DNA of 64,000 nt. Origin: Laetmonice hystrix. Lineage: Eukaryota. The DNA lies in contig OZ249437.1 of NCBI GenBank assembly GCA_965235115.1, forward strand, positions 27,156,001 to 27,220,000. Direction: 5' to 3'. A program made the position numbers and the translations under genes. Of the stretch, positions 28,670 through 37,635 are shown piece by piece. Each line of letters opens with the position of its first letter. The stretch's first letter is position 1. The notes beneath the pieces were generated by a model. It saw only the letters and a list, made by a program, of their open reading frames with translations, was not told where the DNA came from and ran no database searches.

Positions 28670-28850
28670 GTTGTAATCAATGAGCGGCCGTTGAAGTTAC
28701 TGGAGGAAGCGATCAGTGGAGTAAACATAGACAACTGTAACCATCCATGTACCGGGCAGCCGTGTCTGAACGGAGGACGCTGTATCCCCATCAGGGACTT
28801 CTACAAGTGCAGCTGTCCGCTTGGATTTGAAAATACCAACTGTGAAGACA
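28670..28850 (+). CDS. EGFLAM: EGFLAM exon, end of LG2 plus EGF-like domain 3 (VVINERP...HPCTGQPCLNGGRC...CSCPLGFENTNCED)
   Basis: Acceptor accag ending 28669; donor gtaagt at 28851 (phase 1). Confidence 0.93.
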
Positions 28851-30944
28851 GTAAGTATGATTCAGCACGTAAGAGTTCTATCGAGTGCCATTTGTATAAG
28901 TAACAAAATATACATAGGGAGACGGAGATTAGGTCTGCCATGCAGCCAATGTATGCAGCATATATGCATGTATATATGATAAACGCTTGTGATTGTGTAG
29001 AAGAAATCTAAACATAACATGTATCAAAAGAGTTGTGAATATTTCTATGATAACCAAACCAAAGACGTAAATGATACCCGTATTATAATTTCAATGTGTC
29101 TCATCATAGGAAGCCAAACGTTGCCCATTGTGCTACATAGAGTTATATATATATATATATATAGTATTTTGCAGATAATGGTAGTTTAAGGCATTTGAAT
29201 GGATAAACTAAATCTTACCTCACAGACACAAGCTTTTACTTAACTACTGATAGCACTCTATTCTTCCACTTCTCATGAATTGTTTCTCCATACTAATATT
29301 CTATGAATATACCTACTATATTTTCAACGAATTTTGTACAGTGCATATCAGAGACATTATGGAATTCAGGGAAACTTCATGGGGAACTGCTTTGGTGGAC
29401 ATTGTCCTGCAGTATAATTACATATCAGTTATTGTACATTGAGGGATCTTTCGACTTCAGTTCTCAGTATTAGACTATTTATATATAGATGATTTATACA
29501 GGTACTCTCTGGATGATGACCAAAGATACCGATCGAATATTTAGCTTTCACAGAAATTGCAGGGTTAGAAAATTGAGGGCATAATTACATCCAAACATAT
29601 TTCTCGCTCTTTATGAATTCGGCATTATGTTAATGCAAAGAAAATTTTCGACAGGTGCTAATTGTTCAGGTTGTGTTCAGAGATAGAAGTCATCGGATAG
29701 AACTTGTCACAGCGGCCGGGTATAGAGGTTTGGATTGGGGGTTACTATAGTGTTTGCAGGTTACGGTTTTGGTCTTAAGGGTAAAGTCAGTAAGGTCAGG
29801 GTATCACGTTAATTAATTAATGAATGAACCTGTGTTATAAATAAGAGTGTCCTAAATGTAATGTCTAACTTGTTACTCACAAGCCACATTGTTAACTGCT
29901 ATGGAATGTTGTTGTCCTACGCCGGAGGCAAGTTGTGTAAAGGGCGACAAGTCCTGTCATTGTGTGTCATCATAACGTTACCTGAGTTCTTACATGTGAT
30001 CAAATCAAAAACCACCGTAAACTTAGATACGTTAGCCATGCAGTCTATATGTTTAATGCTATATGGAGTCGAAGAATGTATGGTAAAAAATGCCTGCACT
30101 AGTCAAGAACCGTTAGTTGAGAATTCTCTGGGAATGACTGACACATTCTTTTCTCTGTCTGAATACCCTAGATGATAGCTACAGGAAACTGTAAACCAGC
30201 ATGAAATTACTGCTCTTGTTCTTAAAGATTCTGTCTACTTCATAAATCTATAAAAGGTACACTATATTAGACCATGGATTAGCCTGATGTAAACTTATAT
30301 ACGCTGTGGTCATGATAATAGCTCTTTTTCCTTTTGTATACAAATGAATGTGTATGTACATCAATTTTTTCCCCTGAACAATTCGTTACATTTGCATATA
30401 TTTGCATAATGTATGCAAACCATCTGTAGATCACATCTGCTGTCAGATTGTATGTCTGCAGGGTGATGTTTCTGAGGGCCCCAGAAACATCATGTCCTAC
30501 ATACGAGCCATTTATCAGATGTGATGTGCAGATGGTCTGTAGCTTGAATCCTCCTAAAACTGTAGCTCTGAGAACCTAGATACACATTATCCTTGCATGG
30601 AACCCTCCCTGCTCTAGAAGACAGTAACCCCCACAGCCGTCGACTGCCATGTGTTCTTAGCCCAGAGAAGGCACTCTTGTGCCTTTATACAGGCTTGTTG
30701 TACTCAAGGAACCAAACGCAGATTTGCTCACCACCTTCCTGCCTGGTGCCCCTCATCCCAGAAGTGGTTTCTCCCAGCAATGTCAAGGGTTGATTCCATT
30801 GTGGGATTGCCAGGGGAGGTGTGTCGTGGAGTGCCTTGTTCGTCGCCGACCTGAGCAAGTCTGCAGCTGCTGTTGTTAGACCATCTATACGGTCCTAGAC
30901 CGGCACAATTTGCCCTTCTCTCTCCCTTACTCTGCCCCTCTCTC

Positions 30945-30980
30945 TGTCTCTCTCACTCTCTCTCTCTCTCTCTCTCTCTC
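30945..30980. repeat. (CT)n microsatellite
   Basis: Run of ct dinucleotides. Confidence 0.85.
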
Positions 30981-31455
30981 TGGAAGTGTAGCGTCTCTTA
31001 CAGGCATGCAAAAAAAAACTGTTTCAACTGACCTGTGATGTCACCTTTGTGCTCCTTCATTTCATTTTACCTCAGCAACTTCAGTTTCATCTATTTTTTT
31101 TTGGTATTGGTCGCGCACGGCCCTTACATTCTCTACAGCTACGATATAATTTCATTTTATTTGGAACCTCATGACTATGACTTTTGTGTGTGATTCTGAC
31201 GTACGTGCACCCTGTTTACTCCTGACCGGAGCAGGCGTTTTGTCCCTCCCTCCCCCTCCCCCCACCAAACCCACACACACAAAAAAAGAATTTTTAATCC
31301 AGATATACCACAATTTTGTGGGATTTCTTTTTTCCAAGTACTTTTTTTGCAAGACGCAGCAAGCGTTGTATATATATATATCTCGATTGTTATTACATTT
31401 CTGTTGTGACGGTACGATTAAAATCACCGTTTCTGTTCATGTTCCGCCACTGCAG

Positions 31456-31530
31456 AGGTTTTGGACCGCTCTCGATTATATTTTGCGCGTGCCCGGCGAG
31501 GTCCTTATGCTAACGCCACCGAACCCCCAG
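31456..31530 (+). CDS. EGFLAM: Candidate 75-nt alternative exon of EGFLAM (K-VLDRSRLYFARARRGPYANATEPP-E)
   Basis: About 90 nt AG-free region ending ctgcag (31455); donor cag|gtgatg at 31531; phase 1 to phase 1; open in the EGFLAM frame; two tandem TGCATG at 31651-31662. Confidence 0.45.
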
Positions 31531-33122
31531 GTGATGCCTACGTCACGCTTCAGTCACACTGCACATGCTCGCTCCCGCACACCGCGTGCTCTCACACTCA
31601 CACACCGGGACATTATTTTCATCATGTTCGGTGGCATTTTTCACACAACATGCATGTGCATGCAAAGCTAAGGCGTGACAGGTTCACAGTTTTGCTCAAG
31701 ATGACCCGATCAACGCCCCTTTCAAACCTACTCTTTTGGGAGATTTTTCCCCGAGGCAGCAGAAGTTGAATTTTGACATGTGCTATTTATTCACCGCTTG
31801 TAAATATATCTATTTTGATACATATTTTTGAGACAAACATAGAATGATTGTCTAATTTGCAATAATTTACTTGGGTGAAAATAGAAAAAATAACCAGTAG
31901 TTGTCTTAAGCTGCTGAAATGCCTTCTTTTTTTTGTAAAGGACAGTTTTGCTACCCTTTCGTTTGAAAAGAAATTGCAAGCGATGGTTTTTTTTGTCAAC
32001 CCGGTAGAATTTATTTCGGAAAGTAGACCTTTTGTCGCACTTATTTTTTGTAAGACCCTTCGGCTTGGCTGATCCAACACCAGCTTTGTGTTTGGTACCA
32101 CTGAAAACCTGATCCGTCTATGGGACGGTTTGCCTGCCTTAGGTCAACGTCCATAACCAAGTTCAATTCATCACGCTTCATGAAGGTAACATAGCCCATT
32201 GGTTGACCAGAAACTATTGAAAAATCATAGTCATAGTTACATCTCAAAGTCATTTTACAGTCACTTGCTGAAACTCGCCGTACCATCATCTCATTCATGG
32301 ATGGATAAATTCCCAGAACGCCTCTGTACGTTAGAGATCATCTGGAGCACAAAAGGACGTCCACAGAATGTTGTCACGTTTGTTGTGTGCATGTTGTTAT
32401 AGCATGAGTCTGCCGCCGCTGCCGCTGCCGCTGCAGTGTTTTACCTCATTCCATTGCCGTGTAGACATGCAATTAAAGGATGTGCGTTGATATGACCTGT
32501 CTGATTCACACACGGATACATACCTTTTAATACACATTAAAGTGGGTTGAAATGGGAGTGGGGGTATGTCTGCCTATAGCTAAACCTTTACATTTGGGCA
32601 GCTTGTACGTGATTATGTGCCTGTCGAGCAGAAAACACTCGGATATGCCAGAAAACTTGTCAGGTATTTACGCTTACAGCGGCAGCCATTCACATGAAAT
32701 TAAAGTATTCATAATTATTTTGGAATTTATTCTAGGGAGACTTAATGGATCATTGAGATGCAATTCAAGTGCATTAAAGGGTATATTCCATTTGATTATT
32801 ATATCGACAGGTGTTATTAAAGTGTGTATGAGTGAAAGTGTTTGATTTTCTGGTGTTCTAATTTAACGGATCACATGTGTTGTGGTGTGAAATTGTCGAC
32901 GTGTGCATTTCGTGTGTTGACGTCATAATCGGACATGGTGCATTGCGTGTGTTGACGTCATGTATACGGTGCCAGTGTGGCCGACCAATCGACGCTCCCC
33001 GCTGGCTTGCCTGTTGTGACGTGGCGTTGCCTCCACAACCATCCGCACTCACTAACGCTTCACACTTGGTTTTGTTCCACTCCTCACTTGCCTTGCATGC
33101 CATCGTGTGGTGGGAATTGAAG

Positions 33123-33137
33123 GGAAGGCGCGCCGAG
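33123..33137 (+). CDS. EGFLAM: Candidate 15-nt microexon of EGFLAM (R/G-K-A-R-R)
   Basis: Branch point actaac at 33051-33056; first AG after it is at 33121-33122; exon ggaaggcgcgccgag; donor gtacgt at 33138; frame-preserving. The acceptor itself (tgaag) is weak. Confidence 0.5.
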
Positions 33138-34575
33138 GTACGTGCTCAACTCGACCCAACAACTCTTGACGGTTCTCAAGTCGGTCATCGTGCCGATACG
33201 ACTACATTTCAAGTAGACTTGTAACCAATGGCTGCACCGCTGTGTACGCGCTCATGGTGCGGCTGGCCCCTGACCTATGACCCCCTGACCCCTAGTAGCG
33301 CGAGGTCCCGCAACCTGTACCACCCCCACCCCCCCATCCGACCCCAGAACCCCCATGAACCCTCCTCGTAGGGGTTGTGAGTGTAGGAACAGTGTGACGG
33401 GCACCAGGCTTAAGCCTGAATGGACACGGCAGACACACACAGGCCTTGGCACGACTGGCCAGCAATAGAAACCTATAACTTGTGGTAACTCTAAACTTTG
33501 AATAATTCAACAGTCTGCACTATACTGATCTCAAACTAACCTTCTGCACCTGTGTACATATGTAAAGTTTGAAGAGTTTCGATATGCCATGATACATGAA
33601 AGTGGTTAAGTCGCCAGGAGGTTATCAATATAAATATGTCACTAACAGTTTCTTGTACACATTAATGTTAACTGATGTAGGTTTATAGGATGAATGCGGT
33701 GTGCTTATCCTTTTAAGTAGTGTATATTTTCTTTAGCGCTACAGATAGACACTCTTTGGCTATACGTTAGACTAAGGTAAAAGTCTCAGAAATTCGCCTC
33801 AGTTTCCATGTGGTAGGTAAATAAATGCATGATATGCCTAATGATTCTGGCATGCCTTCTGTGATACTAGTCACAAAATTAACATGTGGTCCAACTATTA
33901 TGATTGGGATACTCATGCCTTTTTTCTAATCCTGATTTATTGAGAATAATACATTTAAGCAATGTTTGATGTGTGTATCTAATTGCGTATGATTAGCACT
34001 GCGGGTTGGTGTAGGAGATGATGTAAGTAGTATATAAAAAGTGTAAGTAGTCTATAAAAAGTGTGTGTGTCTGTGCTGAGGTTCCTTCCGGTCCCCCCTG
34101 CTGGGAGCCACACTGCCTCTACCCTCACAGCCAACGTGTCTTATAGCTATGGGCCTACTGTATGTTATGTTACCATGTAAAAAGGCGATTCGCACCAGCC
34201 AAACTGACAACTGTGAAGCCTCTGTGTATGGTTAGAAATGACGTTGATATTAGGCTTATGCAAAATCTGACCCATTCATTCCACGAAGCCACCGAGCTTT
34301 CCTTTGTATTCTATGAATTATGTTCTGCCTCGCGTCATTTTAATTGATGCAGACGTTTTGAAGCTTATCATGAATTCACATAGGCTGTTTGAAATAACTA
34401 AATACAATGGTATTATTGATTGAATTTTGGACCAGACTTCTGTTCTGCAAGTCTCACAAAAACGAGTTGATCAGCAGTCAAGGTGGTGCGCACCGTCTAA
34501 GCTAACCTATCTTAAGTTACAGCAGACAAGTTGTAGACCCCCTTATACTTACGTTGTTACAATGCCCTCATGCAG

Positions 34576-34654
34576 AGTTGAAGGAACCAATCAGGGAGCC
34601 AATGTTTGGTGGCGACAGCTACCTAGTCTACATGGACCCTTTCATCATGCAGAG
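34576..34654 (+). CDS. EGFLAM: EGFLAM exon, start of LG3 (LKEPIREPMFGGDSYLVYMDPFIMQR); not in the ORF track
   Basis: Acceptor tgcag ending 34575; donor gtgtgt at 34655. Phases 1 to 2 exactly bridge the neighbouring exons; PxFxGxSYL is the LG start motif. Confidence 0.88.
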
Positions 34655-35294
34655 GTGTGTATGCTTCGCAGCCCAGCCGCCAGGAGGGGTTTGGGGCGAT
34701 AATAGGGGAATTGGGTGATCGGGTCTAGCTCCTCAAGCTCTTTTCCTCAGAAAGAGTTATTGCACGGCGATGAACAGAACCAGAAGTAGCTCTATCGACG
34801 GCACAGACAAAATACTAAACACTTGATTGTAGCTCGGGGCGTATTGCCTCGTTATGGCTTGAATACTGTTTAGACTGAGGTCTGTTTTCGAGCTTTCATG
34901 TTGTGCCGATCTGCTTCTAGATTGAATACATACCTACATTGTGTAGGCCTAATGGATTTGATCAAAACGGAATGTTATTATTATGTGAGACCATGTGATC
35001 AGTATAAGGATAACAATAAATGATACGGAACTATTGATAACATACAAATTGCAGAAAATATCAATGTAGAACGGGAGTGTATTAGGCGTGGCCTATAAAG
35101 TATAATTGAACGCAATCGGTTGTGCTATAACGTTACGGCATCTTTACGATTGGCCGGGTCATGCGGAACGGGGAACCCTTGATATCGCTCCTAGATGTAA
35201 CCTTCACCGATCTTTAAATCTAGACTATGTGGATTATCATTGAGCCTACATGTACAAATCATCATGGATTAATTTCAAGCGCCGTTTCCTACAG

Positions 35295-35525
35295 GGTTCG
35301 TGGGAAGAAGATCGATATTCAAATGAAGATCAAGGCCAAAGGCCCGGATGGTCTGCTCTTCTGGACGGGAGAGGAGAAGATGACGTCATCGAGTGACTAC
35401 CTTGCCCTGGGCATTGACAGTGGTCACGTCCAGTTCGGCTACAACCTGGGCTCGGGCGAGGTGGTTATCACCTATAACGAAAGCCGTATTGACGATGGCG
35501 CTTGGCACAAGATCCGAGCTCAGAG
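35295..35525 (+). CDS. EGFLAM: EGFLAM exon, LG3 core (VRGKKIDIQMKIK...YNLGSG...DDGAWHKIRAQR)
   Basis: Acceptor tacag ending 35294; donor gtacgt at 35526. Confidence 0.93.
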
Positions 35526-37486: not shown

Positions 37487-37635
37487 GTGGAATGGATGAT
37501 ATCGTCCTGTCTACAATGAGGAAGTATAGAACTGGATTTGTTGGGTGCGTTTCCGATGTCACCTTGGCAACAGACTATCATATTGACCTCATCGGCGAGG
37601 CTGCCGAAGGTCAGAACGTTCAACAATGTTCATAG
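37487..37635 (+). CDS. EGFLAM: EGFLAM terminal coding exon (GMDDIV...GFVGCVSDVTLATDYHIDL...NVQQCS*)
   Basis: Acceptor tttcag ending 37486; TAG ends at 37635. Confidence 0.93.

What the first reader, a model, noticed from the sequence alone, without database searches (positions are those of the whole stretch)
33051..33146. 15-nt microexon encoding a KARR basic patch just before LG3
Seen: perfect ACTAAC, a long pyrimidine tract, TGCATG at 33094-33099, first AG at 33121-33122 and a strong donor. Translation gives ED-RKARR-ELKEP, or PP-GKARR-ELKEP after the 75-nt exon. Known: the agrin y insert KSRK confers heparin binding, and R-X-X-R is the minimal furin-type site. Inference: it adds a heparan-sulfate-binding or cleavage switch. 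Caveat: the acceptor is weak, and a second AG at 33126-33127 would give a frameshifting 10-nt exon.
Basis: partly seen in the sequence, partly recalled or inferred. Interest (0 to 1): 0.75.

Follow-up and report, generated by a model that had tools for sequence, protein, structure and literature searches.

The report
Conserved 15-nt microexon in pikachurin-like gene
A 15-base mini-exon hidden in an intron of an invertebrate pikachurin-like (synaptic matrix) gene is almost certainly real: three distantly related species keep the same exon, its splice signals and its encoded Arg-Lys-Ala-Arg-Arg peptide, although no RNA data yet show when it is used.

Summary
No RNA run exists for this organism, so the junction reads could not be checked.

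Comparative DNA supports the exon instead:
- The gene is a single-copy pikachurin-like gene (LG–EGF–LG–EGF–LG).
- The orthologous EGF→LG3 intron was recovered from three other unnamed species. Their synonymous sites are saturated (33–48% third-codon identity).
- Each intron holds one 15-nt AG…GT exon encoding the same R-K-A-R-R-E.
- All four keep ACTAA[CT] 66–73 nt upstream, a pyrimidine tract, CTTGCATG 11–22 nt from the AG and a 79–145-nt AG-free zone.
- This layout matches the published code of Srrm234/eMIC-dependent neuronal microexons. The genome also encodes an eMIC-like motif.

Skipping appears to be the default. Two relatives' transcripts and about 35 orthologues have the 12-residue skipped linker. 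One other relative's transcript carries a different basic insert at this junction.

The function (convertase cleavage or heparan-sulfate binding) remains inference.

Verdict: a real, translated, alternatively used microexon; a new member of a known kind. The scan had noted this gene's microexon candidates on this window only, not on other DNA.

The parts
28670..28850 (+). Upstream constitutive exon (end of LG2 plus the last EGF domain). It ends ...NCED plus one A (phase 1); the donor GT is at 28851.
   Evidence: It is 80% identical at protein level to transcript P0176. The same exon end (GA[CT]A|GT) is present in L004, L016 and L008.
33050..33148 (+). Conserved intronic island holding the microexon and its upstream signals.
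   Evidence: It is 90% identical over 100 nt to L004, while the coding exons are 75-81% identical and third-codon positions 42%.
33051..33056 (+). Branch-point consensus ACTAAC. The branch A is 67 nt upstream of the acceptor.
   Evidence: ACTAA[CT] is kept at 66-73 nt from the AG in all four species.
33057..33093 (+). Pyrimidine-rich tract (76% C/T, contains CTCCTC), displaced upstream of the acceptor.
   Evidence: It is part of a 45-nt stretch that is 100% identical in L004.
33094..33100 (+). TGCATGC: a UGCAUG (Rbfox-type) element that also holds two UGC (SRRM3/4-type) motifs, 21 nt before the AG.
   Evidence: CTTGCATG is kept 11-22 nt from the AG in all four species.
33121..33122 (+). Acceptor AG, the first AG after a 145-nt AG-free zone. 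It is weak (AAG|G preceded by a purine-rich stretch).
   Evidence: An AG at the same place is kept in all four species, as CAG|G in L016 and L008.
33123..33137 (+). 15-nt microexon GGAAGGCGCGCCGAG. With the flanking split codons it reads R-K-A-R-R-E and replaces the K of the skipped form.
   Evidence: Orthologous 15-nt exons occur in L004, L016 and L008. The five substitution events are all synonymous in this frame and non-synonymous in the others.
33138..33143 (+). Donor GTACGT (context GAG|GTACGT).
   Evidence: One search gives a score of 8.7, equal to constitutive donors of the gene. GAG|GTA is kept in all four species.
34576..34654 (+). Downstream constitutive exon (start of LG3). It begins with AG, which completes K (skip) or E (inclusion).
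   Evidence: Orthologous exons start with AG or AA in all four species, giving the same K and E.
31456..31530 (+). Neighbouring 75-nt candidate alternative exon in the same intron (same phase, contains RARR). It can precede the microexon.
   Evidence: L004 keeps it as a 69-nt in-frame exon with both splice sites and RSRR. It was not found in L016 or L008.

Best explanation
Positions 33123-33137 are a genuine, translated, alternatively included 15-nt cassette microexon. The gene is a single-copy pikachurin-like extracellular matrix gene of a lophotrochozoan, probably an annelid.

What inclusion does to the protein:
- Splicing 28850>33123 and 33137>34576 changes the linker between the last EGF domain and LG3 from NCED-K-LKEP to NCED-RKARRE-LKEP.
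- This adds 5 residues and a net charge of about +2.
- The linker is otherwise fixed at 12 residues, which becomes 17.

How the exon is recognised (inferred):
- The acceptor is weak and would need help.
- The branch point and pyrimidine tract are pushed about 65 nt upstream.
- A UGC-containing UGCAUG sits between the tract and the AG, there is a long AG-free zone, and the donor is strong.
- This is the published signature of Srrm234/eMIC-dependent neuronal microexons.
- The exon is therefore most likely skipped by default and included in neurons or other eMIC-expressing cells. Rbfox may modulate it through the invariant UGCAUG.

What the peptide does (inferred):
- The invariant RKARR motif lies in an exposed flexible linker and acts as a sequence-specific basic recognition site.
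- Most likely it is a dibasic proprotein-convertase site that would release LG3. This parallels neurotrypsin cleavage of agrin in the same linker.
- Alternatively it is a heparan-sulfate or heparin-binding patch.

My odds:
- real translated microexon: about 0.9
- alternative rather than constitutive: about 0.8
- eMIC-type regulation: about 0.6
- convertase site: about 0.35
- glycosaminoglycan binding: about 0.35
For: Shown by tool results:
1. All motifs are at the stated places.
2. Orthologous introns from three other species each hold one 15-nt AG...GT exon reading R-K-A-R-R-E (L004, L008, L016). In every species the upstream exon ends in A and the downstream exon starts with AG or AA, so the skipped form gives K and the included form gives R...E.
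3. Five substitution events occurred among the four copies: AGG/AGA, GCG/GCC, CGC/AGG (two changes) and CGA/AGA. All are synonymous. My estimate is that about 26% of random changes would be synonymous, so roughly 1e-3 for all five. The other frames change the peptide.
4. Neutral sites are saturated between these species (third-codon identity 33-48%). Even so, the window and L004 share 90% identity over 33050-33148, including a 45-nt perfect block.
5. The branch point, pyrimidine tract, CTTGCATG and a 79-145-nt AG-free zone are kept in all four species.
6. The published cis code for eMIC exons lists long AG exclusion zones, UGC near the 3' splice site, long UCUC-rich pyrimidine tracts and strong CUAAY branch points (PMC8797185). 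A second paper describes the pyrimidine tract and branch point lying farther from the AG, with a UCU_CUC...UGC enhancer (bioRxiv 10.1101/2024.09.17.613571).
7. The genome encodes an eMIC-like motif...RRRKGSPSHLDRRRIT. It matches Pfam SRRM_C at 29.9 bits against a cut-off of 27.
8. The skipped form exists as mRNA in a close relative (L007) and in a more distant one (L002). About 35 orthologues have the 12-residue linker.
9. A transcript of another relative (L005/P0283) carries an 11-residue basic insert, RKVRYRYRFKR, at exactly this junction.
10. In an AlphaFold2 model of that relative, the insert and linker are coil with block-mean pLDDT 56-76. The flanking EGF domain scores about 92 and LG3 95-98.
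11. No Rfam family lies in the intron, and the stretch is single copy.
Against: - There is no RNA evidence of inclusion in any species. The only runs holding this DNA are genomic.
- The closest relative's assembled transcript is the skipped form.
- No annotated isoform of any orthologue differs at this junction, including species annotated by NCBI.
- The annelid Owenia has a 420-nt intron here without the exon. The exon is therefore clade-restricted.
- An upstream UGCAUG usually represses exons in the Rbfox RNA map (my knowledge).
- RKARR is not the strict furin consensus R-X-[K/R]-R.
- The three comparison contigs are unnamed. L016 and L008 are fairly close to each other (92% amino-acid identity), so the independent lineages number about three.
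Confidence: 0.8

Rival explanations
1. The conserved island is a non-coding intronic element: a splicing silencer or decoy, a recursive splice site, an enhancer or an unknown RNA. It would never contribute codons to the mature mRNA.
For: The most conserved part is the 45-nt intronic stretch upstream of the exon, not the exon itself. No inclusion transcript was seen. Juxtaposed AG and GT sites can serve recursive splicing (my knowledge).
Against: Exon length, AG and GT are all kept in four species. All five substitutions are synonymous only in the phase-1 frame, including a two-step CGC/AGG arginine codon switch. The split codons give the same residues in all four species. The 5.7-kb intron is short for recursive splicing. 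There is no Rfam match.
Confidence: 0.07
2. The element is mainly used through the second AG (33126-33127). That gives a 10-nt frameshifting 'poison' exon which lowers expression through nonsense-mediated decay.
For: The second AG is present in all four species. L016 and L008 also have a third internal AG. The first acceptor of the window is weak.
Against: The internal AGs are forced by the Lys and Arg codons. The first AG after a long AG-free zone is normally the one chosen (scanning model, my knowledge), and in L016 and L008 it is a strong CAG|G. Selection on the amino-acid sequence of all five codons is unexplained if the product is only a frameshift.
Confidence: 0.04
3. The exon is real but constitutive in this species: always included rather than regulated.
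For: No transcript of this species is available. The donor is as strong as constitutive donors.
Against: A close relative within the clade that shares the exon yields a skipped-form transcript (L007). The weak acceptor with displaced pyrimidine tract differs from the gene's constitutive acceptors. All orthologues have the skipped linker length.
Confidence: 0.07
4. The match is a chance co-occurrence of splice-like motifs in a compositionally odd intron stretch.
For: AG-free runs of 90 nt or more are common in the window: 28 on the + strand and 16 on the - strand. The stretch 32740-33120 is poor in AG on both strands.
Against: The same exon and signals recur in three other species whose neutral sites are saturated. 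The pattern occurs once per orthologous locus and nowhere else.
Confidence: 0.01

Closest known systems
Srrm234/SRRM3/SRRM4 (eMIC)-dependent neuronal microexons of bilaterians
   Same: It is a 15-nt, frame-preserving exon that changes a surface or linker segment of a synapse-related protein. It has a weak 3' splice site with the branch point (CUAAY) and pyrimidine tract displaced upstream, UGC between the tract and the AG, a long AG-free zone and a strong 5' splice site (PMC8797185; bioRxiv 2024.09.17.613571). The genome has an eMIC-like motif.
   Different: Neither neuronal inclusion nor eMIC dependence has been shown. The conserved upstream element is the full UGCAUG hexamer, which may indicate Rbfox rather than, or as well as, SRRM. 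I found no paper describing this exon at this gene or position.
Agrin y (A) site insert KSRK
   Same: A very short alternatively spliced basic insert in an LG/EGF-module synaptic matrix protein. In agrin it creates a heparin-binding site and weakens alpha-dystroglycan binding (PMC6450144).
   Different: The agrin y site lies inside LG2, in the J-K loop next to the Ca2+ site. The present exon lies in the EGF-LG3 linker. The gene is pikachurin-like, not agrin, and heparin binding is untested.
Agrin beta-cleavage site (neurotrypsin) in the EGF4-LG3 linker
   Same: It has the same topological position. In agrin the linker just after the last EGF is cut (-KGLVEK/S-) to release LG3 as the CAF-22 fragment (PMC9616769). 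A microexon-encoded dibasic site here could likewise release LG3.
   Different: The agrin site is constitutive sequence cut by neurotrypsin after a single Lys. Here a dibasic convertase-type motif would be supplied only by splicing, and no cleavage has been shown.
Agrin z (B) site microexons (8 and 11 residues)
   Same: They are neuron-specific mini-exons near the start of LG3 in a related LG-EGF-LG architecture (PMC6450144).
   Different: By my alignment from memory of the agrin sequence, the z-equivalent junction of this gene is one intron downstream, at 34654/35295. The present exon lies before the first LG3 exon and encodes an unrelated peptide.

Membership tests
Cassette microexon (3-27 nt, frame-preserving) | Length of 27 nt or less, a multiple of 3, with no stop codon in the host frame | tested here: met
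   15 nt, phase 1, reads R-K-A-R-R-E.
Cassette microexon (3-27 nt, frame-preserving) | Functional AG acceptor and GT donor, conserved in orthologous introns | tested here: met
   AG and GAG|GTA are kept in four species at exactly 15-nt spacing.
Cassette microexon (3-27 nt, frame-preserving) | Purifying selection on the encoded peptide | tested here: met
   Five of five substitution events are synonymous in the host frame only.
Cassette microexon (3-27 nt, frame-preserving) | mRNA molecules both with and without the exon | tested here: inconclusive
   There is no RNA run for this organism and the DNA runs show no joints. The skipped form was seen in relatives' transcripts L007 and L002. The included form was not seen. 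A different basic insert at the same junction was seen in L005.
eMIC (Srrm234/SRRM3/4)-dependent neuronal microexon | Cis code: long AG exclusion zone, strong distant CUAAY branch point, long pyrimidine tract, UGC close to the 3' splice site | tested here: met
   AG-free zone of 79-145 nt, ACTAA[CT] at 66-73 nt, TGC at 19-35 nt from the AG in all four species. Compared with PMC8797185.
eMIC (Srrm234/SRRM3/4)-dependent neuronal microexon | The organism encodes the eMIC domain | tested here: met
   PF15230 match of 29.9 bits (cut-off 27) at G000:C18:20459758-20459838. It reads RRRKGSPSHLDRRRIT. Only 27 residues matched.
eMIC (Srrm234/SRRM3/4)-dependent neuronal microexon | Neuron-enriched inclusion that depends on the eMIC domain | not testable with these tools
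   No RNA data exist.
Proprotein-convertase (furin-type) cleavage site | R-X-[K/R]-R consensus, or the minimal R-X-X-R / [K/R]-X-X-R-R form | tested here: inconclusive
   RKARR contains R-K-A-R and K-A-R-R, so the minimal forms are met and the strict consensus is not. Strict forms occur in the neighbouring exon (RARR, or RSRR in L004) and in the L005 insert (RFKR).
Proprotein-convertase (furin-type) cleavage site | Exposed, flexible location in a secreted protein, with demonstrated cleavage | tested here: inconclusive
   In the model of a relative's natural insert, the insert and linker are coil with block-mean pLDDT 56-76. Cleavage itself cannot be tested here.
Agrin y-site-type heparin-binding insert | Basic insert inside the LG2 loop next to the Ca2+ site | tested here: not met
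   The insert lies in the EGF-LG3 linker, three residues after the last EGF cysteine. Agrin's site is described in PMC6450144.
Agrin y-site-type heparin-binding insert | Confers heparin or heparan-sulfate binding | not testable with these tools
   The only observation is that D-R-K-A-R-R fits XBBXBX (sequence).
Pikachurin (EGFLAM)-like gene | C-terminal LG-EGF-LG-EGF-LG architecture ending after LG3, with best named relatives annotated as pikachurin | tested here: met
   The exons map onto transcript P0176 and named pikachurin-like proteins of Owenia, Lingula, molluscs and chelicerates. There is a single copy in the genome.

The most novel reading that the evidence does not exclude
A microexon acts as a splice-controlled proteolytic switch. 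In eMIC-expressing neurons, the included RKARR (together with the neighbouring RARR exon) makes the EGF-LG3 linker a convertase substrate. The dystroglycan-binding LG2-LG3 tandem is then split and a free LG3 fragment is released. This would be an invertebrate, splicing-gated counterpart of the neurotrypsin/agrin CAF-22 system.
Probability: 0.25. Interest if true: 0.75.

Novelty: new member of a known kind. Interest (0 to 1): 0.55.

Why it matters
**For the method.** A microexon called from raw sequence alone can be validated without any RNA data. Deep conservation of the exon, its split codons and its regulatory layout was enough.

**For biology.**
- It adds a conserved lophotrochozoan example to the bilaterian neuronal-microexon programme, in a synaptic-matrix gene whose vertebrate orthologue organises the photoreceptor ribbon synapse.
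- The invariant RKARR lies in a linker of otherwise fixed length, between the two LG domains that vertebrate pikachurin needs for dystroglycan binding (PMC6450144).
- It is also at the place where agrin is cleaved to free LG3 (PMC9616769).
- This gives a directly testable hypothesis: splicing gates either proteolytic release of LG3 or glycosaminoglycan binding.

Tried and rejected
**RNA evidence**
- The search for sequencing runs found only three runs of one sample. All hold intron and exon alike, so they are genomic DNA.
- Laying them on 28700-34690 gave contiguous contigs and no joints. This only confirmed the assembly.

**Isoforms in other species**
- About 35 orthologous proteins all have the 12-residue (11 in cephalopods) skipped linker.
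- NCBI isoform sets of Mya, Centruroides and Tachypleus differ elsewhere in the protein.

**Comparison loci that gave nothing**
- The orthologous Owenia intron is 420 nt, same position and phase, with no microexon.
- The genomic DNA of two further relatives could not be fetched because the files were too large (P0288 and P0305).
- Two other contigs ended before the intron (L009 and L043).
- blastn missed the exon in L008 and L016. A splice-aware scan and a degenerate codon pattern found it.

**Other readings checked**
- There is no paralogue in the genome.
- No Rfam family lies in the intron.
- The stretch is not a repeat.

**Vertebrate comparison**
- I could not establish where vertebrate EGFLAM isoforms differ.
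- Only a passing mention of an EGFLAM microexon was found, in bioRxiv 10.64898/2026.05.13.725022.
- The one fish protein looked up had no isoform partners.

**Not tried**
- No complex prediction was attempted, because no binding claim is made.
Full report
**Observation**

- ACTAAC at 33051-33056
- a C/T-rich stretch up to 33093
- TGCATG at 33094-33099
- AG at 33121-33122
- the 15 nt GGAAGGCGCGCCGAG at 33123-33137
- the donor GAG|GTACGT
- a second AG at 33126-33127

The AG at 33121 is the first after 32974, which gives a 145-nt AG-free zone. The upstream exon ends at 28850 with a lone A. The next exon starts at 34576 with AG. The skipped mRNA therefore reads NCED-K-LKEP and the included one NCED-RKARRE-LKEP. 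After the 75-nt candidate exon (31456-31530) the included form reads PP-GKARRE.

Inside this window alone the combination is only moderately unusual. AG-free runs of 90 nt or more occur 28 times on the + strand. A scan for 'AG, 3-30 nt, strong GT' with a branch point, a pyrimidine tract and a long AG-free zone gave three + strand rows, at two acceptor sites, both in this gene. It gave none on the - strand. The stretch is single copy in the 627-Mb genome, is not a repeat and matches no Rfam family.

**The gene**

The LG3 exon finds three-LG proteins in a library of 1.8 billion proteins. The full-length relatives are named pikachurin or pikachurin-like in molluscs, the annelid Owenia, Lingula, chelicerates and insects. 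The nearest full-length sequence is an unnamed JGI transcript, P0176. Its main exon matches to the window are 70-87% identical at protein level, apart from the three LG3 exons at 46-61%. The genome has one copy.

The exons in the window are the EGF exon 28670-28850, the first LG3 exon 34576-34654, the second LG3 exon 35295-35525, and the gene end near 37632. By my recollection of the agrin sequence, the agrin z-equivalent junction is 34654/35295. That is one intron downstream of this finding.

**RNA**

No RNA run holds this DNA. The three runs found are one sample and hold 84-97% of the sampled words, introns included. Laid on 28700-34690 they give contiguous contigs and no joints. They show about 47 variants across 6 kb, none within 33050-33148.

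**Orthologous proteins**

In about 35 orthologues, 12 residues separate the last EGF cysteine from the F of the F-x-G motif of LG3 (11 in cephalopods). This equals the skipped form here. NCBI isoform sets of Mya, Centruroides and Tachypleus differ elsewhere. Owenia has the intron at the same position and phase, but it is 420 nt long and holds no exon.

Three shorter entries were informative:
- L007 is a Logan transcript contig of a close relative. Its flanking-exon protein sequence is close to the window's, and it is the skipped form (NCED-K-LKEPIRIPMF).
- L005 is a JGI transcript of another relative. It carries an 11-residue basic insert, RKVRYRYRFKR, exactly at this junction.
- L006 is a third transcript. 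It ends after the EGF with KSARYRYRYRYRYIH and a stop codon.

This junction therefore does accept basic inserts in real mRNAs of related animals.

**Orthologous introns (the decisive evidence)**

Three genomic contigs of other, unnamed species span the EGF→LG3 intron:
- L004, a Logan contig
- L008, an ENA contig
- L016, a WGS contig found by a pattern scan

Between any two of the four species, the flanking exons are 78-92% identical in protein. They are only 33-48% identical at third codon positions, so neutral sites are saturated. Despite this, the window and L004 share a 100-nt island at 33050-33148 with 90% identity. That is higher than any coding exon (75-81%), and it includes 45 consecutive identical bases upstream of the AG.

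A splice-aware scan and a degenerate codon pattern then found one 15-nt exon in each intron:

| Locus | Exon |
|---|---|
| window | GGAAGGCGCGCCGAG |
| L004 | GGAAGGCCCGCAGAG |
| L016 | GGAAGGCCAGGCGAG |
| L008 | GAAAGGCCAGGCGAG |

 The pattern occurs nowhere else in 353 kb of fetched DNA on either strand. In all four species the upstream exon ends GA[CT]-A, and the downstream exon begins AG or AA. Skipping therefore gives K and inclusion gives R-K-A-R-R-E in every species.

The four copies differ by at least five substitution events: AGG/AGA, GCG/GCC, CGC/AGG (two steps) and CGA/AGA. About 26% of random single changes in these codons would be synonymous (my calculation). Five out of five therefore has a chance of about 1e-3. 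Switching between CGN and AGR arginine codons is a classic sign of selection on the protein.

I conclude that the 15 nt are translated in this frame in at least some mRNAs.

**Regulatory layout**

All four species keep the same arrangement:
- ACTAA[CT], with the branch A 66-73 nt upstream of the AG
- a pyrimidine tract
- the octamer CTTGCATG ending 11-22 nt before the AG
- an AG-free zone of 79-145 nt
- a GAG|GTA donor

The gene's constitutive acceptors instead have the pyrimidine tract directly at the AG.

[quoted passage not shown] It also matches the report that the pyrimidine tract and branch point lie farther from the AG, making room for a UCU_CUC...UGC enhancer bound by SRRM3/4 (bioRxiv 10.1101/2024.09.17.613571).

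The genome encodes an eMIC-like motif, RRRKGSPSHLDRRRIT. It matches Pfam SRRM_C at 29.9 bits against a cut-off of 27.

That the exon is neuron-specific and eMIC-dependent is an inference from this layout. The conservation of the full UGCAUG suggests Rbfox may also act. From an upstream position Rbfox would usually repress (my knowledge).

**Function**

The insert lengthens a linker of otherwise fixed length from 12 to 17 residues and adds an invariant RKARR. An AlphaFold2 model was made of a relative's natural insert-bearing EGF-LG3 (P0283:87-344, 43-sequence alignment, mean pLDDT 89.7). It shows the insert and linker as coil with block-mean pLDDT 56-76, lying between a confident EGF (about 92) and LG3 (95-98). 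The site should therefore be exposed.

RKARR fits the Cardin-Weintraub XBBXBX pattern. It also fits the minimal convertase forms R-X-X-R and K-X-R-R, but not the strict R-X-[K/R]-R (my knowledge). Strict forms occur in three neighbouring sequences:
- the 75-nt exon (RARR)
- its L004 orthologue (RSRR)
- the L005 insert (RFKR)

In agrin, the same EGF-LG3 linker is the neurotrypsin beta site, whose cleavage frees LG3 (PMC9616769). The agrin y insert KSRK lies inside LG2, where it creates heparin binding and weakens dystroglycan binding. Vertebrate pikachurin needs the LG2-LG3 tandem to bind dystroglycan (PMC6450144).

The complete invariance of the five residues, without any K/R exchange, favours a sequence-specific site over a generic charge patch. 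I rate convertase cleavage and glycosaminoglycan binding about equally (0.35 each).

**Rival readings**
- A purely non-coding conserved element (0.07) does not explain the frame-specific synonymous pattern.
- A 10-nt poison exon (0.04) does not explain it either.
- A constitutive exon (0.07) conflicts with the skipped transcript of a close relative.
- Chance is excluded by the four-species recurrence.

**Comparison and novelty**

This is a new member of a known kind: a cassette microexon of the neuronal eMIC type in a synaptic-matrix gene. I found no paper describing a microexon at this position of pikachurin. One preprint mentions an EGFLAM microexon in human tissues without giving its place.

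The exon is restricted to a clade. It is absent from Owenia, and it was not seen in mollusc, brachiopod or chelicerate proteins.

The interest is moderate. The exon and its invariant peptide are well supported, and its position makes a splicing-gated cleavage or binding switch directly testable. Inclusion itself has not yet been observed.

Noticed in passing
window 30469-30489 (also L004:1273-1293 and L008:11661-11681): A 21-nt element, TTTCTGAGGGCCCCAGAAACA, lies in the same intron. It is 100% identical in three of the four species, while its flanks do not align. It occurs once in the 627-Mb genome. In the window it sits inside a perfect 12-bp inverted repeat with a 7-nt spacer (RNA fold -15.4 kcal/mol). 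It has no AG...GT exon shape, and its function is unknown. It was not found in L016.
   Followed up: partly
window 31456-31530 (L004:2363-2431): The neighbouring 75-nt candidate exon is conserved in L004 as a 69-nt exon. It has an in-frame 6-nt difference, both splice sites and an open frame (KVLDRSR...ARARRG against ...ARSRRG). It was not detectable in L016 or L008. It is probably a second real alternative exon carrying a strict R-X-R-R motif.
   Followed up: partly
L006:611-1060 (JGI 3300036111 transcript): This transcript of a related pikachurin-like gene is spliced after the last EGF into a sequence reading KSARYRYRYRYRYIH followed by a stop codon and a 3' UTR. That would give a protein lacking LG3.
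   Followed up: no
L005:9-1043 (JGI 3300008013 transcript, P0283): This transcript carries the 11-residue basic insert RKVRYRYRFKR between the EGF and LG3, ending in a strict furin-type RFKR. The genomic contig of a near relative (P0305) could not be fetched, so its exon structure is unknown.
   Followed up: partly
window 30787-30863 (L004:1810-1887): A further intronic block is about 75% identical between the window and L004. It was not examined.
   Followed up: no
G000:C18:20459758-20459838 (-), locus L010: This exon encodes RSRSPRRDSRSPSIRRRKGSPSHLDRRRIT and matches Pfam SRRM_C (eMIC region) just above the cut-off. It is probably the alternative eMIC exon of the species' Srrm234 gene.
   Followed up: partly
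window 32685-32797: In all three DNA runs this 113-nt stretch is assembled as two alternative contigs that differ at five positions, with depths of about 42 and 28. This looks like two haplotypes.
   Followed up: no
P0035 (Dermacentor silvarum protein), residues about 755-768: The annotated tick orthologue has 14 extra residues (SKWSDLVFPRERCL) at the agrin z-equivalent junction inside LG3. This is either a real insert or a retained piece of intron in the gene model.
   Followed up: no
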